Assembly: GCA_907165135.1 (NCBI GenBank)
Contig: OU015566.1
Location: forward strand, 14,446,001-14,510,000
DNA from: Oikopleura dioica
Taxonomy: Eukaryota > Animalia > Chordata
Direction of reading: 5' to 3'
DNA: 64,000 nt
Under the pieces are notes generated by a model. It was given only the letters and a program-made list of their open reading frames with translations. It had not been told where the DNA came from and did not search any database. Shown piece after piece: positions 7,374 to 64,000 of this stretch. Every line of letters begins with the position of its first letter. Position 1 is the first letter of the stretch. The translations under genes were made by a program, and so were the position numbers.

Positions 7374-8198
7374 GAGTGGAGGACTCTCGCCCAAGTGGAC
7401 TCTCGCCCAAGTGGACTCCCGCCCAAGATGGACTCCCGCCCAAGTTGGGCGAGAGTCCTTTGGGCGAGAGTCCATGTGGAAATTTTCAACAATGAGAAAC
7501 AGAAAGTTGGGCGAGAGTCCTCCACTCCAATTGTTAATGACTATTCAATGACAAAAGAAAGCAATGAGCTGTATATAATATATATGCAATGTACTTTGTA
7601 TAAATTAAAGTTAGGGTTAGGGGGCACTGGGCAAAATGACAGAACAACCTTACCCGAGGGGGATAGGCTAGGGTTAGTTAGGGTTACTGAAGGTAACCCT
7701 AAGTAACCCTAGACTAGACCCCGGCATCTTAGGACCTAAGGGGCGAAGCCCCGTGGTAAGGGGCAATTAGATTTGATAATTTCGGCTGAAAAGCGGTGCA
7801 GTAAGACTTACCTTCTCTTTCAACTTAGTCGAGGATAAGTACTTTTTGAGAGTTCCAGTTTTATTAGCAAAGGTCAATATTTTCTCACGTCAAAGAATTT
7901 ATGCTTTCGCTTATTTTGCTGGACAAACCGAAACTGGAACTCTCAAAAAGTGCTAATCGTCGACTAGGTTGAAAAGAAGGTAAGTCTTACTGCACCACTT
8001 TTGTCATTGAATAGTCATTAACAATTGGAGTGGAGGACTCTCGCCCAAGATCGGCTCTCGCTCAACTTTCTGTTTCTCATTGTTGAAAATTTCCACATGG
8101 ACTCTCGCCCAAGATGGACTCCCGCCCAAGTTGGGCGAGAGTCCTTTGGGCGGGAGTCCACTTGGGCGAGAGTCCACTTGGGCGAGAGTCCTCCACTC
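7374..8198. mobile_element. Non-autonomous MULE/foldback-like DNA transposon (825 bp)
   Basis: Long TIRs start GAGTGGAGGACTCTCGCCCAAG, with tandem GGACTCTCGCCCAAG subrepeats. Perfect 9-bp TSD CCTTCAGCC at 7365-7373 and 8199-8207. Extra internal hairpin at ~7787-7865/7930-8003. Confidence 0.85.
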
Positions 8199-8217: not shown

Positions 8218-9062
8218 GGCTGCTCCTTGATCGCGCGGAATCCTGGATCGCGCGGATCCCGGATCGCGCGAATTCCTTGATCACGCGGATCGGGTGATTC
8301 AGGATTCCGCGCGATCCAGGATTTCGAATGAAATTGGAAATTCAATTTACAATTCTGCTTTTCTTATTAAAAACGGGTAGAAATGGTGTTAAACCATGTA
8401 ATAATTATCTTTTCAATGTAGAAATTTAAGAATATCAACTAAAAAGAACCTTCAACTAAATCTTCACTCAACTATTTTTGATTGTTTGATTTCCGGGACC
8501 TTCTTTTATACGCAGGGATTAGCAACGCTCAAGGTCCATTTGGAGGTGACAAATGGAAGGCAGTCCCGGATTTTTGCAGGAACAGAATAGAATAAATATT
8601 GAGAGCTACTCTTATTTTAAGTTAATTATCATAATTAACGATTCCCTTCATTTCCTTCTCTTGATTCTTTTCAAAACATTTCTCAAATATTTGTCTGACC
8701 CTGCGAAAATCCGGGACTGCCTTCCATTTGTCACCTCCAAATGGACCTTGAGCGCTGCTTATCCCTGCGTATAAAAGAAGGTCCCGGAAATCAAGCAATC
8801 AAAAATAGTTGAGTGAAGATTTCGTTGAAGGTTCTTTTTAGTTGATATTCTTAAATTTCTACATTGAAAAGATAATAATTACATGGTTTAACACCAGTTC
8901 TGGCCGTTTTTAATAACAAAAGCAGAATTGTAAATTGAATTTCTGATTTCATTCGAAATCCTGGATCGCGCGGAATCCTGAATCACCCGATCCGCGTGAT
9001 CAAGGAATTCGCGCGATCTGGGATCCGCGCGATCCAGGATTCCGCGCGATCCAGGAGCAGCC
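8218..9062. mobile_element. Non-autonomous MULE/foldback-like element (845 bp), near-perfect palindrome
   Basis: Arms ~8218-8580 and ~8700-9062 (start GGCTGCTCC, end GGAGCAGCC) around a ~120-bp spacer. GATCGCGCG subrepeats. 9-bp TSD CTCCTCATA at 8209-8217 and 9063-9071. Confidence 0.9.
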
Positions 9063-21259: not shown

Positions 21260-23087
21260 GCAACATCTTAGCAATGATGGATCAAAAATTATTGATGCAA
21301 ATTTGCCAGCACCTGGAGATGCTCACAGTGCTATCGGAGGACATGTTCCGACTTATGAGGGAAATCCGATTCTCATTGCTGGATATGATCATTTCAATAA
21401 GAGATACACCAGATCTGTCGAGCAATACAGGTTTGTACTTTCATACTTCTTGACGAAAACGATGATTTATAGTGAGAATGATGGCAGCAACCGTTTTGCC
21501 CGTTTTGCCGTTCTGCACCAATGCCGTTTCGCCCCGAATGCCGTTCTGCCCGTTCAGGGCGAAACGGAAAAATGGGCAGAACGAATTTTCGGGCGAAACG
21601 TCATTTTCGAGGCGAAATTTAGGAAATTATTTTGAATTTGATGATGAAGGCGAAGATTCGGTTGGCCCAGTCCCCGCCGAGTGAGAACGTGCAGGATTTG
21701 TCGAGCCGAGTGAAGGAGATGTAAGGGACCACGCCGCCGGTGTTAACTCCTGCAGAGGCTGCCCCTTGGTCCAAGTTTGAGAAAGTCTCGGTGTGAATCC
21801 TTGAGTAAACATAAACTGGGGGCATCCTGAGCCGGGAATTTTGATCAACCACGGCCCAGATGATCCTCAAAACTGAAGATATGGAAGACAAAAAAATAGA
21901 ATTTTAATTCTCCGCTATCGTTAAAGTCTTTTGATGATAGACTTTTGAAATAAATCACTTCCAATTATTATCAGCTGCTTGAATCAAAGTAACTTTCTTA
22001 ATTACTTCCGGTTTGGGAGTAGGGGGAAAGGGAGAATCTACCTGCACATTTGGTTGCGCAACTCAAAGAGGCCGTTGCTGGAGGACCGTTGGAAGATAAG
22101 TCTATCAAGAAAAGCATTCGAGAGAAAATGGCCCGAGTTTCGTTACTTTTTGAAGTTACTTTTTCAAAGTAACTTCACTTCAAAGTTAAAGTGAAGTGAT
22201 TCGGAACTCTGGCCCGAAGATGAACATCACCAGCATCAAAAATTCCTGAGGAAGCAAGATCGATTCCTATCTACCATCACAATCCTGCCGTCAGTTTCTT
22301 TAATCCCGATTCAACTTAAGTGGTCAACGAACGATTTCTTCAAGCTGAATTTACGAACAAGAGGGGCATGTTGGTCAAGATCTGGATATTCAAGAACGAG
22401 ATTCATCTTGCATTTTTGACATTAAAAAAAATTACGACTTCATAATCGTGATCAGCAGTCAATTTTACCCTAGTTGGTAATTTTTCAGAAAATTCCATTT
22501 TTGCTGTCTTCCACATCTTCATTTTTGAAGATCATCAAGGCTGAGCTTGATCATGATCTCTGGCTCAAGATGCCCCCAGTTTATGTTTACTCAAGGAATC
22601 ACACCGAGACTTGCTCCAACTTGGGCCCAGTCTCTGCAGGAGCTCACACCGGCGGCGTGGTCCCTTGCATTTCCTTCACTCGGCTTGACACCTCCTGCAT
22701 GTTCAAACTCGGCGGGGGTTTGGCTAACCGAACCTAAATTGATGATCGTACAGGAGAAAAGATTTGTATTTTTAAAATGAAGCTTTACTTTTTAACTTTT
22801 TCATTTTCCAAAATGCCGTTTTGCCCAATGCCGTTTTGCCCCGAATGCCGTTCTGCCCATTTTTCCGTTTCGCCCTGAACGGGCAGAACGGCATTCGGGG
22901 CGAAACGGCATTGGTGCAGAACGGCAAAACGGGCAAAACGGCTGCTGCCGAGAATGATGGCTGGATCAACGACTACAGGATTCTTTTTCCAGAGTCGTAT
23001 ATTGAAAGTTACTCTTCTGTTTGGGGCGATTTTGGCGTCGTCATCTTTCCAGGAGACTCTCAGTATGTTTATCTGTTCAAAGTTTGA
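21260..23087 (+). pseudogene. Kelch/beta-propeller-like gene fragment disrupted in an exon by a MULE-like insertion
   Basis: Removing the element and one TSD restores ...YEGNPILIAGYDHFNKRYTRSVEQYS ENDGWINDYRILFPESYIESYSSVWGDFGVVIFPGDSQYVYLFKV*. The kelch assignment rests only on the ILIAGY..SVEQY..W pattern. Confidence 0.45.
21483..22949. mobile_element. MULE-like element (1,467 bp) with ~430-bp imperfect TIRs containing coding-like sequence
   Basis: Termini GGCAGCAACCGTTTTGCCCG / CGGGCAAAACGGCTGCTGCC. 9-bp TSD GAGAATGAT at 21474-21482 and 22950-22958. Arms ~21483-21900 and ~22490-22949. Confidence 0.85.
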
Positions 23088-26044: not shown

Positions 26045-26190
26045 GAATTTATGAAGAAGGAAGAAGAAGATTTTATTAAAATTTTTTATGAAAAAAAAAG
26101 AGATTTTAGGAAGAAAATTGAAGAAGAAGAAGAAAAAGAGATAAAGAGAAGAAAGGAGAAGAAAAAGGAAGAAAAAAGGTAGGAGAAAAA
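26045..26190. repeat. Purine-rich (GAA/AAAAG) low-complexity tract
   Basis: Runs of gaagaagaagaaaaagagataaagagaagaaaggagaag. Confidence 0.7.
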
Positions 26191-26413
26191 CCTGTGTAAA
26201 AAACCTGAGTCAGGGCTCAGGAAAAGCAAAGAAGAAAAGCCGCTTAGCGGCTTTTTTAGAAAACGAAGCCGAAATCGGCTTCGTTGGAAAAAATAACTTC
26301 GTTTCGTTTTAAAATTCTTCAGAAGCCGATTTCGGCTTCTTTTACTGAAAAAGCTGCTAAGCAGCTTTTATTTTTCACTATTCCTGAGCCCTGACTCAGG
26401 TTTTCTACACAGG
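26191..26413. mobile_element. MITE, CCTGAGTCAGG family
   Basis: CCTGTGTAAAAAACCTGAGTCAGGGCTCAGGAA ... TTCCTGAGCCCTGACTCAGGTTTTCTACACAGG; internal AGCCG-N3/4-CGGCT palindromes. Confidence 0.75.
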
Positions 26414-26473
26414 TTCTTTTAAAATTGGGGGGGAAAGATTTGGGAGAAAAAAAGAGCTATTGAAAGCTCTGTT

Positions 26474-26750
26474 AGGACCCTGACTCAGGCTTTCTTTAAA
26501 AGAGAAAGCCAATTTCTTGTAGCTGAGAATCCCTTTTTTTTTCGCCGGAAGTAAAAAAACAGGGTAGCTCAGTGGCCAGAGCGCGGATTAATTTCCGGGA
26601 CGTGGGTTCGAATCCTACTCCTGCACTTCTGGCGCGAAAAAAAGGATTTTCAGCCGCTAGAAATCGGCTTTTTCTTCTAAAAAACGAAGCCGTTAAGCGG
26701 CCTCTCTTAATTTTAAGGCTAAAAAAGGGGGAAATCTGAGTCAGGGTCCT
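26474..26750. mobile_element. Palindromic element (TIR AGGACCCTGACTCAG) with a tRNA-derived core
   Basis: TIRs at 26474-26488 and 26736-26750. Inner arms GCTGAGAATCCCTTTTTTTTTCGCCGGAAGT / ACTTCTGGCGCGAAAAAAAGGATTTTCAGC flank the tRNA-like sequence. Confidence 0.6.
26560..26625 (+). ncRNA. tRNA-like sequence (pseudo-tRNA or SINE-type Pol III promoter)
   Basis: A box TAGCTCAGTGG, D stem GCTC/GAGC, T stem GTGGG/CCTAC with B box GGTTCGAATCC. Anticodon arm degenerate (CGGA-TTAATT-TCCG); acceptor stem only 5 bp. Confidence 0.6.
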
Positions 26751-28039
26751 GAGAGAGGTCATTTTCGGAGAGCTCGAATGCCTGATTCAGGTTTTTTAAT
26801 GAAAAAAAGGGCTGAGAAGCCGATATTCTCCAGAAAACTGAGTAGAAAACCGGAGTCAGGTTTCAAAAGAGCTAAAATGAAAAGTCCCAATGCTTTTATT
26901 TCGAAAACGAAGCCGCAAGCGGCTTTTACAAGCGATAAAAATGGCTCAGATCAATTCATTCATCTTCCGAACCCACCAAAGAAAGGAGCAGCTAAGAAAG
27001 AAGACCCAAAAGAAAGAAGAAGCGCCAAAGAAAAAGGACAAGCCAAAGAAAGAAAAGAAGGAAAAGAAGCCTCAGCCAGCGAAAGCAGCCGAACCAGAAA
27101 AGCCAGCCGAATTTTCATCCCTAGAAAACAATTCTTTCAGCAAGAGCTTCCGATGTAAACCTCTACTCTCGATCTGCTCTTCACGGTAATTACTGCACGA
27201 TTGCGATCATTCTGCGCGCCGGGTCCCGAAATACAGTCGATATTCCAAACGGCGTCGCTCACTTGGACGAGAAAATGGCCATTGGAGCGACTCTCGATTC
27301 TTTTGCTTCGAGAACGCAAGTCAGAGAGTTTTTGGAGATAATCGGCGGAATTAGCGACTCCCAGACTGACCAAGAAGGGCAAGTAAGCCGCTACAAAGCT
27401 GCTGCCGATCCCAACGAATCTTCGGAAGACGATCTAAAGGTAAAAAACTAGAATTACAGGCCAGAGAAGCATTATTCCTAGCTGCGGACGTGGCAAGACA
27501 AAGCAGAGGAGCTAGAACTGACAAATGAACATTTGGAGAAGAGGCTTGAGAAGATCCGACAAGCGAGAATGAAAATTTGAACCAAGATTTCCATCGAAGA
27601 CAAAATAAAACTCTGCCAGCGAAATTTTGCATCTCTTCAACCTCACTTCACTTTCATGCCTTTGAACGACTCACTCTATGAATTCTTTAAATCGGAAAAA
27701 AATAAAGATATCATAATTCGGCTTCTCGTCTCATAATCCTCAATCTTTACAAGTGAAAAGTACATCACTCATTATTCAACTTCGATGTTCCCATATGCAA
27801 GTGTATCTACAATTTCGCATATAAACTAGTTTGAGTTTAAGACAATTCTGCATGACACAATTCTGCTAAAGTAACAGTACAGGCCTACTTTTTCCAAGAA
27901 TACCTATCTTTATGTTACAAATTGTGACTTTTGTCTACAAAAATAAGCCTTTAGAAATGAGCAAGAAAAGGAGATTCGGCTTTGACAAGAAGCAGGCAAC
28001 GTTTTCGTCTTTGTCCTCGTCGCTTATGATGACTTCCCT

Positions 28040-35163: not shown

Positions 35164-36871
35164 ATGAAGCCTTCACCCCACTTCAAATCGCCGAAGAAGA
35201 CTTCTAACAAATCATCCAACTCGAAGCTGGCCTCAGATCTTGATCCCGACCAACCAAGTAAGCGATAAAATAAACATTGAAAATAAACTCGAATTATAGC
35301 GCCGATTCCCCAACGAAAGATAAGATTTGCGAAGGAATCAACTGAGATTTCCCCTGAAATACCGTTACCGGAGCTTCCCCAATCTCAGGGGAGCACGGAT
35401 GGCTGGGTAAACTCTGCTCTTGCTTCTTCACAATCCTCTGAGAACACCCTGGGATCCGAAGAAGAGATCGATGGAATTTCCGTATCAGTCAGTGGTGAAC
35501 TTTTCGATAATGAGCTGCAGCCAATGGATACTACGCAGATTACCCAGCAAGACCAAGAAAAAGCTAACTACTCTCAAGGCTCCTCCGTCTACAAAACGCC
35601 TGAAAAGAGTCTACCGAAAACGCCCAGTAAGACTGATCAATCAGCACCCGCTACGGCTCCACAGCCCTCGAGAAACCTTCGTCGAATCCTCTTCAATGAA
35701 AATCAGACAGGGAGATCAAAAAAGGTGATGAAAAGCAAAGCGAGGAAATTCGACAATAAATCGAATAGGTCCTTTGAAAGGAATTTCGGATTTGAAAAAT
35801 TCTTTTATTAATTTGATCCTTTGAATTTTTGAAATCCGGCAAAGACGAAACAACACGTCATCGAAACATTACACGATTGACGATATTTTCAACGATCCGA
35901 TCGTTCCAAACTCGACTTTTCCAAGCGCCAAGAAGAAGCCCTTATCAACGAAGAACGCGATGGTCGATTTGACGAAATCGAAGAAACCGAGGAAATCAGA
36001 ACAGTGGTCGCCCGTGCCGCTCGCGATAATGCGAGGATTGAGGAACGAATCGGAGCCTTTCAGATTGAGGAGAAATCGGAAGAATGCTTTTTCTGAAACG
36101 GCGCCTGTTGAGGAAAGGGTTGAAAAGTTTTATTGCTTCAAGAAATTTTCCGGAGAAAAAATAATTTTTTTTTTTTTATCAAAAAGTTCCCTTTCCAACC
36201 TTTAAAAAAGCCAACTCAAACTCGGAAAAGCATCGGCGACTCGTTTCTCGACAACACTGTTACCGTGACCAATCTTCCTTCCGAGAGAAACGCTGCTGAT
36301 ACGACAAATCCCGAGTACGAGACAATTGACCGCTCTTTAAATGTCACCGCTGGTACCTCCGAACAGCCTGAGCCTGCTTTCTCTGGCTCTTCTTCAGATG
36401 TTTCCTCCAGAAGAATGGCACGCAAGGACGATAAAGGCTCTTCAATTGCTGATGCTGTAAAAACCGCTTCAAATCAACGAGAAGAGGTAACGATTTGAAA
36501 TCATGAAAAAGTACTCTAACTTCATTTTAGTCTGACGAGTCAAGCCGACCAGCTACGCGAGCAGCGTCAGTCCGAATAGCTTCGAGGGCAGCGTCAAGCC
36601 GAATTAGCCAAGCTATATCAAACCATATCAACCCGCCGAAAAGAACGAAGTGGACAGAAGTAAGCTTTTTATAAATGATTTAAATCTTTAATTGTTATAA
36701 ATTTAGGACGAGGACGGCAAGCTGATAGAAGGCCTCAATCTATACGGAAAAAACTGGAAAAAGATCGAGGTAGAGTTTTTCCGAGGAACGACGAGGACGA
36801 ACGTCAACCTCAAAGACAGACACCGTGTGCTTCTCAATAAAGACGACCATCGGGTGAAGGAAAAATACTAA
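35164..36871 (+). CDS. Telobox/TRF-like Myb-domain gene, paralogue A (no PDZ; middle region rearranged, status uncertain)
   Basis: Last exons give KRTKWTE|DEDGKLIEGLNLYGKNWKKIEVEFFRGTTRTNVNLKDRHRVLLNKDDHRVKEKY*. 5' exons, introns and 3' flank are clearly homologous to 48088-52050. Segment ~35720-36200 is unrelated to paralogue B. Confidence 0.6.
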
Positions 36872-51100: not shown

Positions 51101-51827
51101 ACCAAAGAAAAGAGTGCGAAACTGAGGCATGACGAACCAACGTGCAGCAAGAATTTAACACCTCCAGCGATGCCACCAGATGCTGATCTTTCTAGCTTCT
51201 TGGACTCGAGCGAGGATGAGGAAGTTCCTCGACCGCAAAGTCGTCCTCGGAGAAGTAATAGATCGCCAACAGCTAGCATGCCGAAGCTCACCAAATCACG
51301 ATCACCAGAGAAGTCACCATCGCCATCTAAATCAAAAAAGAAGCCGATTTCGATGAAGAAAAATGCTGTAAAAACCAGACGACGGAATCCGAGGCCAGAA
51401 TCTATTGCTTCGAATCAACGAGAAGAGGTAACGATTTGTAATCATGAAAAAGTACTCTAACTTCACTTTAGTCTGACGAGTCAAGCCGACCAGCTACGCG
51501 GGCAGCGTCAAGCCGAAAAGCTTCGCGGGCAGCATCAAGCCAAATTACAAAAATTTGTGCGAATAAAGAATTTGCCCCAGTCGTGCAGGACTCAAAAAGA
51601 AAGAATTGGACAGATGTAAGCTCTTTATAAATGATTTATATCTTTAATTGTTATAAATTTAGGACGAGGACGCCAAGCTGATTGAGGGCCTCAATCAATA
51701 CGGAAAAGACTGGAAAACGATCGAGAAAAAGTTTTTCCGTAGATCGAAGAGGACCAACGTCCAACTCAAAGACAGACACCGTGTGCTTCTCGATAAAGGC
51801 GACCCACGGGTGAAGGAAAAATACTAA
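48142..51827 (+). CDS. Large disordered protein with a PDZ domain and a C-terminal TRF-like telobox Myb domain (paralogue B, ~1,150 aa, 5 coding exons)
   Basis: Canonical GT-AG splicing keeps the frame from ATG 48142 through a 2.8-kb stop-free exon to TAA 51825-51827. PDZ: GRIGFRL..GIYINGIIPGSAADKAGLRVGDTLICFNG. Myb: KRKNWTD|DEDAKLIEGLNQYGKDWKTIEKKFFRRSKRTNVQLKDRHRVLLDK. Confidence 0.85.
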
Positions 51828-52124: not shown

Positions 52125-53451
52125 ATGGTCAAGGGGCGCAATACTGTCGACTTCAAGCCGAGCTACAGGCCGCCAGATCTCCGATTGGTCCTAGAATCCG
52201 TTCCTGAAACCACTCTCAGTGCCAAACACAGAGCCATCATAGAAAAGTCCCTTGACGAACCAGTCACAACGACACCTCCTAAGTCAAAAACAAAGTCAGC
52301 TGGTCCTAAATCGCCGAAGAAAAGCGGCGCTATCTGCGGAAAAGCCGAGAGCTCGTCTTGCTTCCTCCTCCGATTACCTACCTACATTATGTATTTCCTT
52401 CTCTTCACAAGTCTAAGCTCACAGTTTGAGTGTACTCGGCCTATTTATAATCAACACTTCAAGGTAAGGTCGCTGATTTCTCAGTGAAAAACAATCTTTT
52501 GCAGCATTATTACGACGTCTACGTCATTCCAAAATACAACGAATACGTCGACCCACATGTACAAGAATTCGTCATCCCTGCGTATAAACAATACGGAGAG
52601 CCACAAATTGCTCAGCTCCAGAAGCTCTACGCTGCGCACGGCCAACCTCAACTTGAAAAGCTAATAAAGCTCTACGATGCTCATTTGAAAGACCACGTCG
52701 ATAAAACGATCACGAGTCTGAATGAGCAAGTCCAAACTCATGTCGTGCCAACTGTCCAAAATGTTCAAAAGGAACTCGAGCCATTTTTCAACAACGCTGT
52801 CAAAAATGGAACAGTCTTGGTCAAGCAACTTCGAGAACAAGTAAAATCAGCAGAAAAGGCTATTTTTAACCTTTACTAGGCTAATGTTCTCGCTGAAAAC
52901 TGGGGTGTAGTTTGCGAACAAGGAATCGCTGACATGCGAGTTCAAATCGACAAGTACAGTGCTCTTGCTCGTGATGAGACGCTCAAGGGACTCGCTAAAG
53001 TTCAACGCGCTAGTAAAGAATACGCTAATGCCGCTCTCGTCAATACCGGTCAGTTCTCTTCTTATACTCTTTTCTTATTGAAATCATAGAGGAGTATCGA
53101 CAACAAGCATCCGTCAAGTTTGCTGAAGTCCAATCTATTGTATATGAAAGAGTTGAAACAACTATTGCTATCATCCAAAAACAGCTTCCAATCATTCACG
53201 AGTTCCTGCTCGAGTACAACATCGACAAGATCTTCTCTAACATCTTCGAGGGTATCGGTCGATCAATTGTCTGGACAGGAGATCTCATTGGAAAAGTCGC
53301 TGCTGGCAGATTCTGCTGCGCCCAGGTTTACCAGCTGATTTTCTCCCTCGTTTTAAGCTATTTCTAGAGCCAAATCGCCCGACTTGGAAACGACATCTAC
53401 GAGTTCGGGCTTCTTGCATACAAGCAAGTTCAAAATCTTATCCAAAATTAG
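52125..53451 (+). CDS. Uncharacterised protein with a hydrophobic segment and long amphipathic helices (apolipoprotein-like); start codon uncertain
   Basis: Five exons splice in frame with GT-AG introns: MVKGRNTVDFKPSY..LPTYIMYFLLFTSLSS..HYYDVYVIPKYNEYVDPHVQEFVIPAYKQY..LAYKQVQNLIQN*. Confidence 0.6.
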
Positions 53452-53682
53452 TTAGATTTTTTCTGAATTTATTTAAAATTGAAAACTGCTGTCCATTTAC
53501 CATTTAGTGCAATACCTACTGTGAATTCAACTTGATTCTATTACTACTAGCTAAAGCAAAACCTTACTGTCGCAAGTTCATTTCTGTAGTTCAATTAAAC
53601 AAAAAAAGCGACCGCTTGAAAATCCCGCTAAATTTCTATGTGTTCAAGTGTATGAAAACATCCATTCAGCGAAGTCAAAAAA

Positions 53683-55350
53683 ATGTCGGACCATGAATCT
53701 GATAAGGAGGAACTGCCAGGACTTGGAAAAAGAGATCTTGTAGAAAGGTGTGTTAGGCAGTAAATAAAGTATTCATATAGGCACTTTCTAGCGCTGAGCC
53801 TCCAGTGAAAAAGCGTCGAAAGAAGAAGAAGCGAGGGCGGGTCCTTACAGTGGACGATATGCCGCGAAAAGTTCGGGAGGAATTCCGAACCGATCAAAAA
53901 GCTGAAAAATTCTTGCGCCTTCTGGGTGGCCTCAAGCCCGAAAACGTACACGCAAATCTTACCTGGATGCGACGATGCAAAACTGGTAAATTTGCGGAGA
54001 TGATGGAGTCTGAGCTTTGGGATCATTTCCTTTCCTGCTTTCATCGAAATTACATGTTTGGCAGAAAAGGTGGTTTCGGATTTGAGAAAAACTGCCATCG
54101 AAGGACCAGCTTGCCTGGCTCGAAATGAAGCAGTGGGAACAAGACTCCGATGACGAAGAGTTGCTCGAACTCCCTAGCGGCTGGATGGAGCGCGACGAAG
54201 AGCCTGAGGAGTACATGAAGGTCACCAATGGACGAGTCGAGTTTAGCGGCAAAACGTATATCAAAGTGTCAGTGATGTACGGAGGCGGTTCTCAGCTGGA
54301 CCCGAGAGACGCGATTTGCGATCCAACGCCCATGTCCGAAATTGAAGCCCAAATCGCCGCAGAAGAAGCTGAAGATACTGACGATGATCTTAAAAATCCA
54401 GATCAGCCAAAAGTAAGGCTTTCTTTGATTCCATTCTCAAGCATTTAAAGCCTATGCCAATGACCGCCGAAGAACAAGAAGCGGCTCGTCTCGCAAAACA
54501 GGCGAAACTCGAAGAAGAAATCCGCGAAAAAGAAGAAGAAATTACCACTGCCAAGCTCGCCGCGGAAACGATGTATCGAGGAATGGGTGTCGAGCCTGGC
54601 GAGGAAAATTCACGATCCCGACGACGTCAGGAAATCCACTGGGACTACGATCACAAGGTAAAATCAAGATTTAAAATTACTCTAATCTCTGTACTCAGGC
54701 GGAACCGGATCTGAAAGTGGGATCTGGCGGCGTTAATAAATTCATATCGGACTCGTATGGATATGGAGGTTACCGTGAATCTGAAATGGCACGTGATCAG
54801 TGGAAAGATCTATCTTACGATCAGACGCATGGGCAGGGGGCCAGCAAATACAGAAAATCAGCCTACGATAATTGGGATCAAGACTTCGAGCAAAAATACG
54901 TAAGAAATCACAATCCCTCTTCGTTTTATTCAGAAATGATTCTAGAAATGGGAGGATTTCGCAACCAAATGGGCGATCAAACGAAAAGAAATGAAATTCT
55001 ACAACAGGTTTATTTTTCTTTTCCAAAAATCTTACTCAAGATCATTCAGACAACACCACAAATACGAGGACATCACAGACACCCGAAAACAGTTCCTCGA
55101 AAAAGAGGATAAGAGATTCAACGAAAAACGAGTCCAAGCTGACGTTTCTTACTGGGCACAAGCAGCTGCTCAGGCCTCAATGGCCGTCCTCGCAGGAAGC
55201 AAAGATGGCAAAATCGATCTCCAGAATGCACCGTGGATGAAACAGCCTGCCCCTGCCCCCTCCAATGAGGATCCAAGAAAAAGATGTCGTATTAACTTTT
55301 CCCACAAGAAATTGTCTGTATTCCCTGTTCACAAATCCACTACCTTCAAA
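53683..55350 (+). CDS. Uncharacterised multi-exon acidic/charged protein; probable 1-bp homopolymer frameshift at 54087-54091
   Basis: MSDHESDKEELPGLGKRDLVES|AEPPVKKRRKKKKRG (NLS-like).. followed by several in-frame exons with GT-AG introns. No family recognised. Confidence 0.55.
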
Positions 55351-55393
55351 ATTTAACGGTCTATTGAAAATATCCAAACTTGATTATCAAAGA

Positions 55394-56240
55394 ATGACAA
55401 CAGAAGTCGAAAATGGTCAGGAAGCAACGCCTGAGAAGACAGATTCTTCAGTTACCGCGCTGCCAATAGAAAAGAAAGAGGAAGGACCCGACGAAGGTAA
55501 AATTGCACTTTTTTGAGTTCCGTCTAATTGCTTTCAGAGGAGTCAGAAGCAGAAGAAATCGACTCAGACGATGATTTGGACGACGATGTAAATATAATGA
55601 TCGGAGATATCGACGGCGAAGCTGTTATAAACATAAACCCAGTACGTTCTCTTCCTTGATTTCCGACACTATACTGATTTTTCCAGAAAGATGCAAACAG
55701 CGAAGACAAAAAGACAAGACGCCTCAGCAAGCAGAAGTGCTCATTACTTCTTCAAGCGGAAAATTGATCCCAAATCCTGAAAAAGATGCACTCACGGATA
55801 AGCCGTGGCAGAAGCCTGGCGCTGACTTATCAGATTATTTTAATTACGGGTATATAAAATATATACTCTCAATCCATTCATAATTTATTCATTCAGATTT
55901 GAAGAAACCTCATGGAGAAAGTACTCGGAGAAGCAGAGAACGCTCAGAGATCGAGCTTTGCTCCTACTGCGGACAAGGACGAACATCGCTCAATTTGCGC
56001 CACCTGGAATGCCATTCCTTCCAATGGGACCATCGCCTATCAAATCTGAAAACTTCAACAGATCTAACCCGCCTCCAGTTATCAGCTCCAACGGCAGTGT
56101 ACCAGTAAGTGCCAGCATGGGCGACCGCAGAGGACCACCAGGTAGGCAGTACACCAGGAAGCAAGCAAATTAACGTCATAATTCTAGATATCAAATAAGA
56201 CAATGACAGTGGCCCACCGCCGCACCTCATGCCTAGGCTT
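55394..56240 (+). CDS. FIP1L1: Pre-mRNA 3'-end processing factor FIP1; 3' end uncertain; probable homopolymer frameshift at 55708-55712
   Basis: Fip1 motif [18 protein letters not shown]|[17 protein letters not shown], acidic N-terminus [17 protein letters not shown], Pro-rich tail. Confidence 0.88.
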
Positions 56241-56855
56241 ACCGCGGTGTTTTTCGATTTTCAAGGTTCCTTTGAAAAATCTCCCCATACTTTCAGAACC
56301 TATGCATCAAGACAAGCCTTGAAAAACTGCACTTGCAGAATTTTCGATATGAGTCATCTTACCTCTTTTTTTGGGGGATTTTTAGCAAGAAAAAAAGCAC
56401 TAGTTTGATTAGAAGCGGCTTTTGAGTGCGTGCTAGATCGATTTTGATTATTTGATGCCTACCATGTGAAAGATAAGCGCAAGACGCATCGATACATATG
56501 AAATTGCGGAGTGCTTCCTTCATATGATTCTAGAGCTTCAAAGTTGACGCAAGCAGCCAGATACGAAAATCCAATATTATCAACTTCTGATATAAGCATG
56601 CTATGATGATGTTTTATAGCTCAAATTGAAGCTTATGAATTACTGAACAAAATGAAATGGTATTTTTTGACCAGCCGGTTGTGCTTCCGGTTCGTCGCGG
56701 TTCATGCCCGGAAATAGGTCAAATTGTAGAAATATGTATATCAAATGAATTCATTTTCAACAGTAAATCTTTTAAACATATTCAGAAGTTCAACCAACCG
56801 GTTATTCTTGCGGTTCATGGTGGTTCATGGTGGTTCAAGCGCAGAAATGAACAAA

Positions 56856-57040
56856 CCGTTTACACAATCCAGTCTGCGACGGGGCCAAGCCGATCCAAAG
56901 GGGAGGCAAGGCCCGTTTACACAATCCAGTCTGCGACGGGGCCAAGCCGATCCAAAGGGGAGGCAAGGCCCGTTTACACAATCCAGTCTGCGACGGGGCA
57001 AAGCCAACCCGAAGGGGAGGCCAGGCCCGTTTACACAATT
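56856..57040. repeat. 57-bp tandem repeat, 3 copies plus a partial copy
   Basis: Unit CCGTTTACACAATCCAGTCTGCGACGGGGCCAAGCCGATCCAAAGGGGAGGCAAGGC; copies 1 and 2 identical, copy 3 variant. Confidence 0.95.
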
Positions 57041-57061
57041 CTGTAAACGCCCGGCTTGGCC

Positions 57062-60000
57062 CCGGTTTCTGCCGGTTTGTCATTAGGGTTACGAATTTGG
57101 ATAAGGTTCAAGATAGTTTGAGAGTGTTTTAGGCCGGTTTCTGCCGGTTTGTCATTAGGGTTACGAATTTGGATAAGGTTCAAGATAGTTTGAGAGTGTT
57201 TTAGGCCGGTTTCTGCCGGTTTGTCATTAGGGTTACGAATTTGGATAAGGTTCAAGATAGTTTGAGAGTGTTTTAGGCCGGTTTCTGCCGGTTTGTCATT
57301 AGGGTTACGAATTTGGATAAGGTTCAAGATAGTTTGAGAGTGTTTTAGGCCGGTTTCTGCCGGTTTGTCATTAGGGTTACGAATTTGGATAAGGTTCAAG
57401 ATAGTTTGAGAGTGTTTTAGGCCGGTTTCTGCCGGTTTGTCATTAGGGTTACGAATTTGGATAAGGTTCAAGATAGTTTGAGAGTGTTTTAGGCCGGTTT
57501 CTGCCGGTTTGTCATTAGGGTTACGAATTTGGATAAGGTTCAAGATAGTTTGAGAGTGTTTTAGGCCGGTTTCTGCCGGTTTGTCATTAGGGTTACGAAT
57601 TTGGATAAGGTTCAAGATAGTTTGAGAGTGTTTTAGGCCGGTTTCTGCCGGTTTGTCATTAGGGTTACGAATTTGGATAAGGTTCAAGATAGTTTGAGAG
57701 TGTTTTAGGCCGGTTTCTGCCGGTTTGTCATTAGGGTTACGAATTTGGATAAGGTTCAAGATAGTTTGAGAGTGTTTTAGGCCGGTTTCTGCCGGTTTGT
57801 CATTAGGGTTACGAATTTGGATAAGGTTCAAGATAGTTTGAGAGTGTTTTAGGCCGGTTTCTGCCGGTTTGTCATTAGGGTTACGAATTTGGATAAGGTT
57901 CAAGATAGTTTGAGAGTGTTTTAGGCCGGTTTCTGCCGGTTTGTCATTAGGGTTACGAATTTGGATAAGGTTCAAGATAGTTTGAGAGTGTTTTAGGCCG
58001 GTTTCTGCCGGTTTGTCATTAGGGTTACGAATTTGGATAAGGTTCAAGATAGTTTGAGAGTGTTTTAGGCCGGTTTCTGCCGGTTTGTCATTAGGGTTAC
58101 GAATTTGGATAAGGTTCAAGATAGTTTGAGAGTGTTTTAGGCCGGTTTCTGCCGGTTTGTCATTAGGGTTACGAATTTGGATAAGGTTCAAGATAGTTTG
58201 AGAGTGTTTTAGGCCGGTTTCTGCCGGTTTGTCATTAGGGTTACGAATTTGGATAAGGTTCAAGATAGTTTGAGAGTGTTTTAGGCCGGTTTCTGCCGGT
58301 TTGTCATTAGGGTTACGAATTTGGATAAGGTTCAAGATAGTTTGAGAGTGTTTTAGGCCGGTTTCTGCCGGTTTGTCATTAGGGTTACGAATTTGGATAA
58401 GGTTCAAGATAGTTTGAGAGTGTTTTAGGCCGGTTTCTGCCGGTTTGTCATTAGGGTTACGAATTTGGATAAGGTTCAAGATAGTTTGAGAGTGTTTTAG
58501 GCCGGTTTCTGCCGGTTTGTCATTAGGGTTACGAATTTGGATAAGGTTCAAGATAGTTTGAGAGTGTTTTAGGCCGGTTTCTGCCGGTTTGTCATTAGGG
58601 TTACGAATTTGGATAAGGTTCAAGATAGTTTGAGAGTGTTTTAGGCCGGTTTCTGCCGGTTTGTCATTAGGGTTACGAATTTGGATAAGGTTCAAGATAG
58701 TTTGAGAGTGTTTTAGGCCGGTTTCTGCCGGTTTGTCATTAGGGTTACGAATTTGGATAAGGTTCAAGATAGTTTGAGAGTGTTTTAGGCCGGTTTCTGC
58801 CGGTTTGTCATTAGGGTTACGAATTTGGATAAGGTTCAAGATAGTTTGAGAGTGTTTTAGGCCGGTTTCTGCCGGTTTGTCATTAGGGTTACGAATTTGG
58901 ATAAGGTTCAAGATAGTTTGAGAGTGTTTTAGGCCGGTTTCTGCCGGTTTGTCATTAGGGTTACGAATTTGGATAAGGTTCAAGATAGTTTGAGAGTGTT
59001 TTAGGCCGGTTTCTGCCGGTTTGTCATTAGGGTTACGAATTTGGATAAGGTTCAAGATAGTTTGAGAGTGTTTTAGGCCGGTTTCTGCCGGTTTGTCATT
59101 AGGGTTACGAATTTGGATAAGGTTCAAGATAGTTTGAGAGTGTTTTAGGCCGGTTTCTGCCGGTTTGTCATTAGGGTTACGAATTTGGATAAGGTTCAAG
59201 ATAGTTTGAGAGTGTTTTAGGCCGGTTTCTGCCGGTTTGTCATTAGGGTTACGAATTTGGATAAGGTTCAAGATAGTTTGAGAGTGTTTTAGGCCGGTTT
59301 CTGCCGGTTTGTCATTAGGGTTACGAATTTGGATAAGGTTCAAGATAGTTTGAGAGTGTTTTAGGCCGGTTTCTGCCGGTTTGTCATTAGGGTTACGAAT
59401 TTGGATAAGGTTCAAGATAGTTTGAGAGTGTTTTAGGCCGGTTTCTGCCGGTTTGTCATTAGGGTTACGAATTTGGATAAGGTTCAAGATAGTTTGAGAG
59501 TGTTTTAGGCCGGTTTCTGCCGGTTTGTCATTAGGGTTACGAATTTGGATAAGGTTCAAGATAGTTTGAGAGTGTTTTAGGCCGGTTTCTGCCGGTTTGT
59601 CATTAGGGTTACGAATTTGGATAAGGTTCAAGATAGTTTGAGAGTGTTTTAGGCCGGTTTCTGCCGGTTTGTCATTAGGGTTACGAATTTGGATAAGGTT
59701 CAAGATAGTTTGAGAGTGTTTTAGGCCGGTTTCTGCCGGTTTGTCATTAGGGTTACGAATTTGGATAAGGTTCAAGATAGTTTGAGAGTGTTTTAGGCCG
59801 GTTTCTGCCGGTTTGTCATTAGGGTTACGAATTTGGATAAGGTTCAAGATAGTTTGAGAGTGTTTTAGGCCGGTTTCTGCCGGTTTGTCATTAGGGTTAC
59901 GAATTTGGATAAGGTTCAAGATAGTTTGAGAGTGTTTTAGGCCGGTTTCTGCCGGTTTGTCATTAGGGTTACGAATTTGGATAAGGTTCAAGATAGTTTG

Positions 60001-63000
60001 AGAGTGTTTTAGGCCGGTTTCTGCCGGTTTGTCATTAGGGTTACGAATTTGGATAAGGTTCAAGATAGTTTGAGAGTGTTTTAGGCCGGTTTCTGCCGGT
60101 TTGTCATTAGGGTTACGAATTTGGATAAGGTTCAAGATAGTTTGAGAGTGTTTTAGGCCGGTTTCTGCCGGTTTGTCATTAGGGTTACGAATTTGGATAA
60201 GGTTCAAGATAGTTTGAGAGTGTTTTAGGCCGGTTTCTGCCGGTTTGTCATTAGGGTTACGAATTTGGATAAGGTTCAAGATAGTTTGAGAGTGTTTTAG
60301 GCCGGTTTCTGCCGGTTTGTCATTAGGGTTACGAATTTGGATAAGGTTCAAGATAGTTTGAGAGTGTTTTAGGCCGGTTTCTGCCGGTTTGTCATTAGGG
60401 TTACGAATTTGGATAAGGTTCAAGATAGTTTGAGAGTGTTTTAGGCCGGTTTCTGCCGGTTTGTCATTAGGGTTACGAATTTGGATAAGGTTCAAGATAG
60501 TTTGAGAGTGTTTTAGGCCGGTTTCTGCCGGTTTGTCATTAGGGTTACGAATTTGGATAAGGTTCAAGATAGTTTGAGAGTGTTTTAGGCCGGTTTCTGC
60601 CGGTTTGTCATTAGGGTTACGAATTTGGATAAGGTTCAAGATAGTTTGAGAGTGTTTTAGGCCGGTTTCTGCCGGTTTGTCATTAGGGTTACGAATTTGG
60701 ATAAGGTTCAAGATAGTTTGAGAGTGTTTTAGGCCGGTTTCTGCCGGTTTGTCATTAGGGTTACGAATTTGGATAAGGTTCAAGATAGTTTGAGAGTGTT
60801 TTAGGCCGGTTTCTGCCGGTTTGTCATTAGGGTTACGAATTTGGATAAGGTTCAAGATAGTTTGAGAGTGTTTTAGGCCGGTTTCTGCCGGTTTGTCATT
60901 AGGGTTACGAATTTGGATAAGGTTCAAGATAGTTTGAGAGTGTTTTAGGCCGGTTTCTGCCGGTTTGTCATTAGGGTTACGAATTTGGATAAGGTTCAAG
61001 ATAGTTTGAGAGTGTTTTAGGCCGGTTTCTGCCGGTTTGTCATTAGGGTTACGAATTTGGATAAGGTTCAAGATAGTTTGAGAGTGTTTTAGGCCGGTTT
61101 CTGCCGGTTTGTCATTAGGGTTACGAATTTGGATAAGGTTCAAGATAGTTTGAGAGTGTTTTAGGCCGGTTTCTGCCGGTTTGTCATTAGGGTTACGAAT
61201 TTGGATAAGGTTCAAGATAGTTTGAGAGTGTTTTAGGCCGGTTTCTGCCGGTTTGTCATTAGGGTTACGAATTTGGATAAGGTTCAAGATAGTTTGAGAG
61301 TGTTTTAGGCCGGTTTCTGCCGGTTTGTCATTAGGGTTACGAATTTGGATAAGGTTCAAGATAGTTTGAGAGTGTTTTAGGCCGGTTTCTGCCGGTTTGT
61401 CATTAGGGTTACGAATTTGGATAAGGTTCAAGATAGTTTGAGAGTGTTTTAGGCCGGTTTCTGCCGGTTTGTCATTAGGGTTACGAATTTGGATAAGGTT
61501 CAAGATAGTTTGAGAGTGTTTTAGGCCGGTTTCTGCCGGTTTGTCATTAGGGTTACGAATTTGGATAAGGTTCAAGATAGTTTGAGAGTGTTTTAGGCCG
61601 GTTTCTGCCGGTTTGTCATTAGGGTTACGAATTTGGATAAGGTTCAAGATAGTTTGAGAGTGTTTTAGGCCGGTTTCTGCCGGTTTGTCATTAGGGTTAC
61701 GAATTTGGATAAGGTTCAAGATAGTTTGAGAGTGTTTTAGGCCGGTTTCTGCCGGTTTGTCATTAGGGTTACGAATTTGGATAAGGTTCAAGATAGTTTG
61801 AGAGTGTTTTAGGCCGGTTTCTGCCGGTTTGTCATTAGGGTTACGAATTTGGATAAGGTTCAAGATAGTTTGAGAGTGTTTTAGGCCGGTTTCTGCCGGT
61901 TTGTCATTAGGGTTACGAATTTGGATAAGGTTCAAGATAGTTTGAGAGTGTTTTAGGCCGGTTTCTGCCGGTTTGTCATTAGGGTTACGAATTTGGATAA
62001 GGTTCAAGATAGTTTGAGAGTGTTTTAGGCCGGTTTCTGCCGGTTTGTCATTAGGGTTACGAATTTGGATAAGGTTCAAGATAGTTTGAGAGTGTTTTAG
62101 GCCGGTTTCTGCCGGTTTGTCATTAGGGTTACGAATTTGGATAAGGTTCAAGATAGTTTGAGAGTGTTTTAGGCCGGTTTCTGCCGGTTTGTCATTAGGG
62201 TTACGAATTTGGATAAGGTTCAAGATAGTTTGAGAGTGTTTTAGGCCGGTTTCTGCCGGTTTGTCATTAGGGTTACGAATTTGGATAAGGTTCAAGATAG
62301 TTTGAGAGTGTTTTAGGCCGGTTTCTGCCGGTTTGTCATTAGGGTTACGAATTTGGATAAGGTTCAAGATAGTTTGAGAGTGTTTTAGGCCGGTTTCTGC
62401 CGGTTTGTCATTAGGGTTACGAATTTGGATAAGGTTCAAGATAGTTTGAGAGTGTTTTAGGCCGGTTTCTGCCGGTTTGTCATTAGGGTTACGAATTTGG
62501 ATAAGGTTCAAGATAGTTTGAGAGTGTTTTAGGCCGGTTTCTGCCGGTTTGTCATTAGGGTTACGAATTTGGATAAGGTTCAAGATAGTTTGAGAGTGTT
62601 TTAGGCCGGTTTCTGCCGGTTTGTCATTAGGGTTACGAATTTGGATAAGGTTCAAGATAGTTTGAGAGTGTTTTAGGCCGGTTTCTGCCGGTTTGTCATT
62701 AGGGTTACGAATTTGGATAAGGTTCAAGATAGTTTGAGAGTGTTTTAGGCCGGTTTCTGCCGGTTTGTCATTAGGGTTACGAATTTGGATAAGGTTCAAG
62801 ATAGTTTGAGAGTGTTTTAGGCCGGTTTCTGCCGGTTTGTCATTAGGGTTACGAATTTGGATAAGGTTCAAGATAGTTTGAGAGTGTTTTAGGCCGGTTT
62901 CTGCCGGTTTGTCATTAGGGTTACGAATTTGGATAAGGTTCAAGATAGTTTGAGAGTGTTTTAGGCCGGTTTCTGCCGGTTTGTCATTAGGGTTACGAAT

Positions 63001-64000
63001 TTGGATAAGGTTCAAGATAGTTTGAGAGTGTTTTAGGCCGGTTTCTGCCGGTTTGTCATTAGGGTTACGAATTTGGATAAGGTTCAAGATAGTTTGAGAG
63101 TGTTTTAGGCCGGTTTCTGCCGGTTTGTCATTAGGGTTACGAATTTGGATAAGGTTCAAGATAGTTTGAGAGTGTTTTAGGCCGGTTTCTGCCGGTTTGT
63201 CATTAGGGTTACGAATTTGGATAAGGTTCAAGATAGTTTGAGAGTGTTTTAGGCCGGTTTCTGCCGGTTTGTCATTAGGGTTACGAATTTGGATAAGGTT
63301 CAAGATAGTTTGAGAGTGTTTTAGGCCGGTTTCTGCCGGTTTGTCATTAGGGTTACGAATTTGGATAAGGTTCAAGATAGTTTGAGAGTGTTTTAGGCCG
63401 GTTTCTGCCGGTTTGTCATTAGGGTTACGAATTTGGATAAGGTTCAAGATAGTTTGAGAGTGTTTTAGGCCGGTTTCTGCCGGTTTGTCATTAGGGTTAC
63501 GAATTTGGATAAGGTTCAAGATAGTTTGAGAGTGTTTTAGGCCGGTTTCTGCCGGTTTGTCATTAGGGTTACGAATTTGGATAAGGTTCAAGATAGTTTG
63601 AGAGTGTTTTAGGCCGGTTTCTGCCGGTTTGTCATTAGGGTTACGAATTTGGATAAGGTTCAAGATAGTTTGAGAGTGTTTTAGGCCGGTTTCTGCCGGT
63701 TTGTCATTAGGGTTACGAATTTGGATAAGGTTCAAGATAGTTTGAGAGTGTTTTAGGCCGGTTTCTGCCGGTTTGTCATTAGGGTTACGAATTTGGATAA
63801 GGTTCAAGATAGTTTGAGAGTGTTTTAGGCCGGTTTCTGCCGGTTTGTCATTAGGGTTACGAATTTGGATAAGGTTCAAGATAGTTTGAGAGTGTTTTAG
63901 GCCGGTTTCTGCCGGTTTGTCATTAGGGTTACGAATTTGGATAAGGTTCAAGATAGTTTGAGAGTGTTTTAGGCCGGTTTCTGCCGGTTTGTCATTAGGG
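57062..64000 (+). repeat. 72-bp tandem array, ~96 apparently identical copies, running off the window end; candidate telomeric or subtelomeric satellite
   Basis: Unit CCGGTTTCTGCCGGTTTGTCATTAGGGTTACGAATTTGGATAAGGTTCAAGATAGTTTGAGAGTGTTTTAGG (T27 G22 A15 C8). The 60-nt lines recur every 6 lines (360 = 5 x 72) and the antisense translation is an invariant 24-aa repeat. Confidence 0.99.

What the first reader, a model, noticed from the sequence alone, without database searches (positions are those of the whole stretch)
57062..64000. Perfectly homogeneous 72-bp G/T-strand array with one TRF half-site per unit: candidate non-canonical telomere
About 96 copies with no visible variant. The + strand is 68% G+T (G22:C8) and runs 5'->3' out of the window, the polarity of a telomeric G-strand. 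Each unit has exactly one TTAGGGTTA (TRF half-site YTAGGGTTR) plus degenerate look-alikes (TTTTAGG, TAAGGTT, TTTGG), as if derived from TTAGGG repeats. The window ends exactly on ..TTAGGG, which may be chance. A 72-nt unit is far longer than known telomerase templates, so maintenance would more likely be by recombination or rolling-circle amplification. Alternatives: a subtelomeric satellite capped by TTAGGG further out, or a centromeric satellite (a dimer is 144 bp, near nucleosome-core length).
Basis: partly seen in the sequence, partly recalled or inferred. Interest (0 to 1): 0.85.

Follow-up and report, generated by a model that had tools for sequence, protein, structure and literature searches.

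The report
Subtelomeric 72-bp satellite, not a telomere
The flawless 72-bp repeat is real, but it is a lineage-specific satellite in the patchwork region about 22 kb from one end of Oikopleura dioica chromosome 1, stopping at an assembly gap, in a species reported to have ordinary TTAGGG telomeres, so it is an ordinary kind of chromosome-end repeat and not a new kind of telomere.

Summary
Window 57062-64000 is 96.375 copies of a 72-bp unit with no mismatch, 68% G+T, with one TTAGGGTTA per unit.

The main interpretation does not hold. The window is chromosome 1 (OU015566.1) of the Okinawan Oikopleura dioica assembly OKI2018_I69. It ends 23,022 bp short of the scaffold end. The array runs on to window 64,987 (110.1 perfect copies). 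It then reads CCGG-TTAGGGTT, then a 500-N scaffold gap, then gene-like DNA. By gene numbering, nine more annotated genes lie in the last 21.5 kb.

The published assembly paper gives TTAGGG as the telomere, reports telomeres at both chr1 ends, and says subtelomeres tend to hold longer-period tandem repeats.

Left of the array is typical subtelomere patchwork:
- a 4-kb copy (96-97% identical) of a PAR locus, cut inside Fip1;
- dispersed repeats;
- a 57-bp repeat.

The unit shows statistical traces of descent from telomeric hexamers. Perfect identity and copy number cannot be trusted, because the assembly was Nanopore-based, consensus-polished, and the contig ends inside the array.

The satellite was not found in JGI marine metagenomes or in one wild-sample run.

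The same stretch was noted before in an overlapping window of this scan (s1-371529, s1-383391).

Verdict: a subtelomeric satellite, a new member of a known kind, of low to moderate interest.

The parts
52188..56233 (+). 4-kb segmental duplicate of a locus on the PAR scaffold (OU015568.1, about 14.437-14.441 Mb). It ends abruptly inside the Fip1 gene. The chr1 Fip1 copy (g3934, 209 aa) is truncated and carries TAA at 56195-56197 where a related-lineage contig (L001) reads TCA in frame.
   Evidence: blastn of L011 against the window gives 96.9% identity over 1,170 nt and 96.2% over 2,888 nt, stopping at 56233. The PAR copy keeps the Fip1-PurA-sulfatase-Iso_dh-DZF order seen in other lineages.
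56234..56855 (.). Mosaic of dispersed repeat segments. The left boundary at 56233/56234 is shared by copies that sit in other contexts.
   Evidence: In read laying, summed word depth rises 5- to 20-fold over the single-copy flank from 56247 on. Loose ends occur at 56233/56234, 56648 and 56855 in several runs.
56856..57039 (+). 57-bp tandem repeat, 3.2 copies here. It belongs to a family that is abundant in all four runs laid. Elsewhere the family continues as a longer array.
   Evidence: Tandem Repeats Finder and the repeat finder D3. The loose end 'behind 57041' continues the 57-bp unit in 13, 20 and 2 contigs of X1, X4 and X7, and depth is very high.
57042..57064 (-). Short inverted piece made of two segments of the 57-bp unit (12 nt and 13 nt). 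It forms the junction with the first 72-bp unit.
   Evidence: the repeat finder inverted pairs I2, I3 and I7-I9.
57062..64000 (+). 72-bp satellite array with the G/T-rich strand on +. There are 96.4 perfect copies in the window. It continues outside the window to 64,987 (110.1 copies), followed by CCGG-TTAGGGTT and a 500-N scaffold gap at window 64,994-65,493.

Best explanation
This is a young, lineage-specific subtelomeric (telomere-associated) satellite of the Okinawan Oikopleura dioica lineage. Shown: the array is real DNA, it stands at a contig end beside a scaffold gap about 22 kb from the scaffold end, and its proximal flank is a truncated segmental duplication followed by dispersed repeats and a second satellite. 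Inferred: part of the unit descends from degenerate TTAGGG hexamers in telomeric orientation. Inferred: the unit was amplified and is kept uniform by unequal exchange, gene conversion or break-induced replication, which is the usual dynamics of subtelomeric satellites. Inferred: the true array is probably longer and somewhat less uniform than the polished consensus. Chromosome capping itself is done by ordinary TTAGGG repeats. The one TTAGGGTTA per unit could bind TRF-type Myb proteins and extend telomere-like chromatin inward, but nothing here tests that.
For: Identity and position: the window's PDZ-Myb protein is OKI2018_I69.chr1.g3931 on a 14,533,022-bp record. Its locus maps the window to OU015566.1 14,446,001-14,510,000.

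Distal side: L003 shows 110.1 perfect copies, then CCGGTTAGGGTT, exactly 500 N, then gene-like DNA encoding an EF-hand-like protein. Table S1 gives chr1 as 6 contigs and 3,943 genes, and Fip1 just left of the array is g3934.

Patchwork flank.

The array is real and not an assembly invention: contigs of runs from two studies other than P2 (X1 of P1, X4 of P3) give summed word depth of 10^4-10^5 on the array, against about 280 and 180 on the single-copy flank.

Telomeric descent of the unit: 34/72 in-register matches to (TTAGGG)12, reached by 178 of 20,000 shuffles. The best 42-nt stretch scores 27/42, reached by 5 of 5,000 shuffles. A telomeric 9-mer appears in about 1% of shuffles.

Youth and lineage restriction: there was no exact match to two parts of the unit in JGI metagenome contigs, which do hold O. 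dioica of another lineage. Depth on the array is zero in the wild-sample run X7, which otherwise carries this locus at about 97-98% identity.
Against: I could not read the last 20.8 kb of the scaffold, so the terminal TTAGGG tract rests on the paper and not on my own reading. The placement and orientation of the 21.5-kb terminal contig come from Hi-C scaffolding and were not checked. The last 8 nt before the gap (TTAGGGTT) could be the start of a real telomere tract, which would put the array directly under a telomere. I could not test whether the satellite lies at other chromosome ends. The shared left boundary at 56234 also fits a mobile element. Contig depth is not a copy number, and read laying silently drops human-like (TTAGGG-rich) contigs, so a junction from array to TTAGGG could not have been seen.
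Confidence: 0.75

Rival explanations
1. The array is the expanded internal tandem repeat of a mobile element, such as a foldback or MITE-like element or another non-autonomous DNA element. The element inserted at, or was captured next to, the truncated Fip1 copy. Its subtelomeric position would then be incidental.
For: The repeat block starts at exactly 56234 in copies with different left neighbours in X2 and X7. A small inverted piece of the 57-bp unit forms the junction. The same window holds foldback elements built of short tandem subrepeats. One of them carries an inverted pair of telomere-like TTAGGGTTAC motifs at 7658-7722, the same 10-mer as in the 72-bp unit. Earlier scan notes list such elements elsewhere in this genome.
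Against: No terminal inverted repeat, target-site duplication or right end was found, because the right side is an assembly gap. Many different internal boundaries (56503, 56648, 56785, 56855) look like a mosaic and not like one element. No homology beyond 10-12 nt exists between the unit and the foldback elements.
Confidence: 0.12
2. The array lies directly under the true chr1 telomere. On this reading the contig end CCGG-TTAGGGTT is the start of the terminal TTAGGG tract, and the 21.5-kb gene-bearing contig was misplaced distal to it by Hi-C scaffolding.
For: The perfect register breaks only in the last 8 nt, and these read TTAGGGTT in G-strand orientation. An earlier unchecked note describes a 51-bp repeat alternating with TTAGGG blocks at another end of this genome (s1-390065). 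The small terminal contig is close to the size limit at which Hi-C placement becomes weak (my own knowledge, not tested).
Against: Eight nucleotides fit equally well a unit with a 17-nt deletion, or a poorly polished contig tip. A similar deleted and diverged unit is seen in X1. A contig that reached a telomere would normally carry hundreds of bases of TTAGGG. The paper reports telomeres at both ends of the chr1 scaffold as built.
Confidence: 0.08
3. A non-canonical telomere: the 72-bp array itself is the chromosome cap, maintained by recombination or rolling-circle copying.
For: G-strand polarity towards the scaffold end, extreme homogeneity, and one TRF-type site per unit.
Against: The array is not terminal in the assembly. 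The species has TTAGGG telomeres by the published assembly. The repeat is not detected in a wild sample of the same lineage or in other lineages, which an essential cap would not allow.
Confidence: 0.02
4. A centromeric satellite, with a 144-bp dimer close to nucleosome-core length.
For: Possibly high copy number in X1 and X4. The authors found no centromeric satellite, so that role is unassigned.
Against: The array lies at 14.50-14.51 Mb of a 14.53-Mb scaffold. The paper describes the centromeres as dividing chr1, chr2 and the PAR into short and long arms. PDZ-paralogue loci at chr2 5.7 Mb and PAR 7.9 Mb have no copy.
Confidence: 0.02

Closest known systems
Subtelomeric (telomere-associated) satellites of organisms that use telomerase, for example tomato TGR1, tobacco HRS60, rice TrsA and great-ape subterminal satellites (named from my own knowledge)
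   Same: A long-period tandem array within tens of kb of a chromosome end. It sits next to segmental duplications and dispersed repeats, is lineage-specific, is highly homogenised, and lies proximal to an ordinary short telomeric repeat.
   Different: The unit is short (72 bp) and carries one exact 1.5-repeat telomere motif. Only one locus was seen here. Direct adjacency to the terminal TTAGGG tract is not shown.
The 'tandem repeats with longer periods' reported in O. dioica subtelomeres by Bliznina et al. 2021 (PMC8008620)
   Same: Same assembly, same class of feature and same kind of location. This array is most likely one of them.
   Different: In the text and supplement I read, the paper does not describe this 72-bp unit, its telomere-like motif or its position at a contig end.
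Long complex terminal repeats of telomerase-less Diptera, such as the Chironomus 176-350 bp units and the Anopheles 820-bp unit (from my own knowledge)
   Same: Long-unit, highly homogeneous arrays near chromosome ends that are kept uniform by recombination.
   Different: Those arrays are the actual termini in species lacking a short telomeric repeat. Here the species has TTAGGG telomeres and the array is not terminal in the assembly.
Interstitial or degenerate telomeric sequences in subtelomeres
   Same: G-strand orientation towards the end, with in-register hexamer similarity to TTAGGG over about 42 nt of the unit.
   Different: The degenerate block has been re-amplified as a 72-bp higher-order unit, and about 30 nt of the unit (the CCGGTTT duplication) is not telomere-like.

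Membership tests
Telomere (terminal cap repeat) | The outermost sequence of the chromosome | tested here: not met
   In OU015566.1 the array ends 22 kb before the scaffold end and is followed by 500 N and gene-like DNA. Nine more genes are numbered after it. Caveat: the placement of the last contig is by scaffolding.
Telomere (terminal cap repeat) | Present at all or most chromosome ends | not testable with these tools
   No tool searches this eukaryotic assembly by DNA. The search of earlier notes by sequence was blank, which means nothing.
Telomere (terminal cap repeat) | No other canonical terminal repeat in the species (needed for a non-canonical telomere) | tested here: not met
   PMC8008620 reports TTAGGG telomeric repeats, found at both ends of chr1 and chr2. 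This is taken from the literature; I did not read those ends myself.
Telomere (terminal cap repeat) | G-rich strand running 5'->3' towards the end | tested here: met
   GC skew is +0.47 on the + strand, which points to the scaffold end.
Subtelomeric / telomere-associated satellite | Tandem array of long-period units within tens of kb of a chromosome end | tested here: met
   110.1 copies of 72 bp at 14,503,062-14,510,987 of a 14,533,022-bp scaffold.
Subtelomeric / telomere-associated satellite | Embedded in a patchwork of segmental duplications and dispersed repeats | tested here: met
   A 4-kb copy of a PAR locus at 96-97% identity, truncated at 56233.
Subtelomeric / telomere-associated satellite | Lineage-specific with rapid turnover | tested here: inconclusive
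   Absent from JGI metagenome contigs and from the X7 contigs. However, contig holes and exact-match scans cannot prove absence.
Subtelomeric / telomere-associated satellite | A canonical telomere tract distal to it on the same molecule | not testable with these tools
   The last 20.8 kb of the scaffold could not be fetched.
Centromeric satellite | Located at the cytological or Hi-C centromere | tested here: not met
   The position is at the scaffold end. The paper describes the centromeres as dividing the chromosome into short and long arms.
Centromeric satellite | CENP-A occupancy | not testable with these tools
   This needs ChIP or CUT&RUN.
Transposon-internal tandem array | Defined element termini (TIR or other) and a target-site duplication on both sides | tested here: inconclusive
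   The left boundary at 56234 recurs in other contexts. The right side is an assembly gap. No matching inverted terminus is present in the window.

The most novel reading that the evidence does not exclude
The satellite and the neighbouring genes form a matched pair. On this reading, the 72-bp array offers one TRF-type site (TTAGGGTTA) every 72 bp as a binding platform for the Oikopleura-specific PDZ plus telobox-Myb proteins encoded 5-20 kb away. That would extend telomere-like chromatin inward, or serve as a recombination-competent back-up cap directly under the TTAGGG tract, if the TTAGGGTT at the contig end is a true exit to the telomere.
Probability: 0.08. Interest if true: 0.6.

Novelty: new member of a known kind. 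Interest (0 to 1): 0.25.

Why it matters
As read here it matters little for telomere biology, because Oikopleura keeps ordinary TTAGGG telomeres and this is one more fast-evolving subtelomeric satellite. It is useful in three practical ways. First, it marks an unresolved spot in the 'telomere-to-telomere' chr1 of OKI2018_I69: a contig ends inside a repeat whose summed word depth on the laid part in two other runs is hundreds of times the single-copy flank's, a hint that it may be longer than assembled (depth is not a copy number). Second, together with the truncated copy of a PAR gene block, it documents how O. dioica chromosome ends are built. That bears on the extreme genome scrambling reported for this species. 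Third, it offers a natural array of regularly spaced TRF-type sites next to lineage-specific telobox genes, which makes a cheap binding test possible.

Tried and rejected
- The 2,306-aa open frame on the minus strand of the array exists only because 72 is a multiple of 3. A search of 5.8 billion proteins found nothing, so it is not a gene.
- Two exact-pattern scans of JGI metagenome contigs with different parts of the unit gave 0 matches.
- Rfam found only a tRNA at 26560-26623 and nothing in the array.
- Single-strand folding of three units gave a z-score of only -1.9, with just small CCGG hairpins. There is no structured element and no G-quadruplex-type run.
- Loci of the PDZ paralogues on chr2 (5.7 Mb) and PAR (7.9 Mb) were fetched to look for further copies of the 72-bp repeat, the 57-bp repeat or the 56234 block. 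None were found. P0014 was not on record.
- Searches of earlier notes by sequence, with the unit and with the post-gap DNA, were blank. Blanks there mean nothing.
- I could not reach the last 20.8 kb of chr1. The look-up needs an exact annotated protein and no homology search was left. ORFs in the 704 nt after the gap are too short and none is an annotated gene.
- Copy-number estimates from Logan contig depth were considered and set aside as unreliable, as the tool itself warns. I report them only as a hint.
Because read laying silently drops human-like contigs, the absence of an array-to-TTAGGG junction carries no weight.
Full report
**1. The observation**

Window 57062-64000 is 6,939 nt. It is 96.375 copies of one 72-nt unit without a single mismatch or indel (script; Tandem Repeats Finder). 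The unit is T27 G22 A15 C8, so the + strand is 68% G+T. GC skew rises from about 0 to +0.47 over the array. Each unit has one TTAGGG, which is part of one TTAGGGTTA, and none on the other strand. No further copy of the unit lies in the remaining 57 kb of the window.

**2. Where the window is**

The large exon at 48653-51460 matches the protein OKI2018_I69.chr1.g3931 of Oikopleura dioica at 100% identity, on a record of 14,533,022 bp.
- Fetching that gene places the window at OU015566.1 14,446,001-14,510,000. The window therefore stops 23,022 bp before the end of the chr1 scaffold.
- It also agrees with the offset given for the overlapping last window in s1-371529.

**3. What lies beyond the window**

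I found the protein of the last gene left of the array, Fip1, through a representative search with one of its exons. A homology search then returned the annotated product g3934. Its locus L003 covers window 45,394-66,198 and is identical to the window over the overlap.

In L003:
- The array is 110.1 perfect copies.
- After the last full unit the sequence reads CCGG TTAGGGTT.
- Exactly 500 N follow.
- After the gap comes gene-like DNA encoding an EF-hand-like protein.

The assembly paper says that scaffold gaps are an arbitrary 500 bp, and that contigs were joined with Hi-C using 3D-DNA. Its Table S1 lists chr1 as 6 contigs with 3,943 genes. Since Fip1 is g3934, nine more annotated genes sit in the terminal 21.5-kb contig. 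The array is therefore at a contig end and not at the chromosome end as assembled. The window ending on TTAGGG is chance.

**4. What the species uses as a telomere**

Bliznina et al. 2021 (PMC8008620) report four relevant points:
- TTAGGG is the telomeric repeat of O. dioica.
- Telomeres were found at both ends of chr1 and chr2.
- No high-copy centromeric satellite was found.

Plessy et al. 2024 (PMC11067885) add that repeat density rises in subtelomeric regions in three lineages. Neither paper, in the text I searched, describes this 72-bp unit. I could not read the terminal TTAGGG tract of chr1 myself.

**5. The proximal flank is subtelomere patchwork**

Window 52188-56233 is a 96-97% identical copy of a locus on the PAR scaffold (L011, OU015568.1 about 14.44 Mb).
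- The PAR copy keeps the gene order Fip1-PurA-sulfatase-Iso_dh-DZF.
- That order is also seen in contigs of other O. dioica lineages (L001, L004-L008), so the PAR copy is the original.
- The chr1 copy stops at 56233 inside Fip1. It also has a TAA where a related-lineage contig (L001) reads a sense codon.

From 56234 onward, contigs of four public runs show multi-copy sequence with several different boundaries.

A 57-bp repeat follows at 56856-57039. It is abundant in all four runs, and elsewhere it continues beyond 57041.

A 23-nt inverted piece of the 57-bp unit then forms the junction to the first 72-bp unit.

This arrangement matches earlier unchecked notes about disabled gene copies near the chromosome ends of this genome (s1-326483, s1-393162).

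**6. Is the array real, and how uniform is it?**

Evidence that it is real:
- Logan contigs of runs from two studies other than P2 (X1 of P1, X4 of P3) give summed word depths of about 2x10^4 to 5x10^5 on the array.
- The single-copy flank gives about 280 and 180 in those runs.
- The repeat is therefore real DNA and may be more abundant than the 110 assembled copies. The tool warns that such depth is not a copy number.

Evidence on variants and distribution:
- Run X2 (depth about 13) shows little depth on the array.
- X7, a wild marine sample that carries this locus at about 97-98% identity, shows none beyond 57119. A hole in contigs proves nothing.
- Loose ends at unit phase 0 in X1 and X2 are diverged units. 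One has a 16-nt deletion and lacks TTAGGGTTA. Variant units therefore exist somewhere in these genomes.

Why the perfect identity is not trustworthy:
- The assembly was made from Nanopore reads with Canu, polished three times with Racon and then with Pilon from short reads.
- Such polishing pushes every unit of a near-identical array to the majority consensus.
- The contig ends inside the array, so the copy number is bounded by read length.
- Perfect identity shows the units are very similar. It does not show they are identical.

**7. Is the unit telomere-derived?**

The unit length of 72 is 12 hexamers. In the register set by its TTAGGG:
- 34 of 72 positions match (TTAGGG)12, which 178 of 20,000 composition-matched shuffles reach.
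- The best 42-nt stretch matches 27 of 42, which 5 of 5,000 shuffles reach.
- Any 9-mer of the telomere repeat occurs in about 1% of shuffles.

This gives moderate support for descent of about 40 nt of the unit from degenerate telomeric repeats in telomeric orientation. The remaining 30 nt, including the CCGGTTT duplication, is unrelated.

The same 10-mer, TTAGGGTTAC, also occurs as an inverted pair in the core of a foldback element at 7658-7722. A mobile-element source of the motif therefore cannot be excluded.

**8. Mechanism**

My preferred reading is as follows.
- A degenerate telomere-like stretch in a subtelomere was amplified as a 72-bp unit.
- The array is kept uniform by unequal sister-chromatid exchange, gene conversion or break-induced replication.
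- It lies proximal to a normal TTAGGG cap.

The amplification mechanism is inferred from general knowledge of satellites and is not shown here. A role as a binding array for TRF-type Myb proteins is possible. Two PDZ/telobox genes lie at about 35.1-37.1 kb and 48.1-51.8 kb of the window (earlier notes s1-383384, s1-371561, s1-383445). That role is untested.

**9. Rivals**

- A transposon-internal array. The shared 56234 boundary, the inverted junction piece and the foldback elements nearby speak for it. No termini or target-site duplication were found.
- An array directly under the real telomere, with the terminal contig misplaced. This rests on only 8 nt, TTAGGGTT, which fit a unit with a 17-nt deletion or a poorly polished contig tip equally well.
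- The non-canonical telomere.
- A centromeric satellite.

The last two are contradicted by the array's position in the assembly and, for the telomere reading, by the published TTAGGG telomeres.

**10. Limits**

The last 20.8 kb of chr1 could not be fetched. No tool searches this assembly by DNA, so the number of loci carrying the satellite is unknown. Only contigs, not raw reads, were available for laying. Contigs rich in TTAGGG may have been dropped silently as human-like, so the lack of an observed junction from array to TTAGGG has no weight.

**11. Verdict**

This is a subtelomeric satellite with an embedded telomere-like motif, a new member of a known kind. Its main practical value is to flag an unresolved repeat at a contig end in a 'telomere-to-telomere' chromosome. 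It also offers a simple test bed for the neighbouring telobox proteins.

Noticed in passing
window 52188-56233; L011 6044-10843: A 4-kb segmental duplicate (96-97% identical) of a PAR locus, carrying three gene copies. The Fip1 copy (g3934, annotated as 209 aa) is cut at 56233 and has an in-frame TAA at 56195-56197 where a related-lineage contig (L001) reads TCA. It is probably a decaying duplicate annotated as a gene. The PAR model g12551 (607 aa) appears to fuse Fip1 with the neighbouring PurA gene.
   Followed up: partly
window 56856-57039: A 57-bp repeat (3.2 copies here) belongs to a family with very high summed depth in all four runs, including the wild marine sample that lacks the 72-bp repeat. 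Most copies elsewhere continue as longer 57-bp arrays. It is an older and more widespread satellite than the 72-bp one.
   Followed up: partly
window 7374-8198 and 8218-9062: Two adjacent foldback (long inverted-repeat) elements built from 16-17-bp tandem subrepeats. The first has arm segments of 51-58 nt that are 98-100% complementary. Its core holds an inverted pair of telomere-like motifs (TAGGGTTAGTTAGGGTTAC) at 7658-7722. The second has 369-nt arms that are 96% complementary.
   Followed up: partly
window 21483-22949: A third foldback-like element. Its arm segments of 108-141 nt are 82-93% complementary and are made of 15-17-bp subrepeats (AATGCCGTTTTGCCC).
   Followed up: no
window 36539-36604 and 51480-51541: The same 27-bp tandem repeat (GTCAAGCCGAA.AGCTACG.G.GCAGC, 2.3-2.4 copies) lies inside both telobox-gene spans. 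In the 48.1-51.8 kb gene it sits about 110 nt before the Myb exon.
   Followed up: no
L003 19589-20100 (window 64,982-65,493): The contig carrying the array ends in CCGG-TTAGGGTT immediately before the 500-N scaffold gap. This is either the first bases of a telomere tract or a unit with a 17-nt deletion or a poorly polished contig tip.
   Followed up: partly
window 57031-63951, minus strand: A 2,306-aa open reading frame with a 24-aa period runs through the array only because 72 is divisible by 3. It has no homologue in the protein collection.
   Followed up: yes
window 26560-26623: A single tRNA gene match (Rfam RF00005, 33.6 bits) next to purine-rich low-complexity repeats at 26095-27058.
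   Followed up: no
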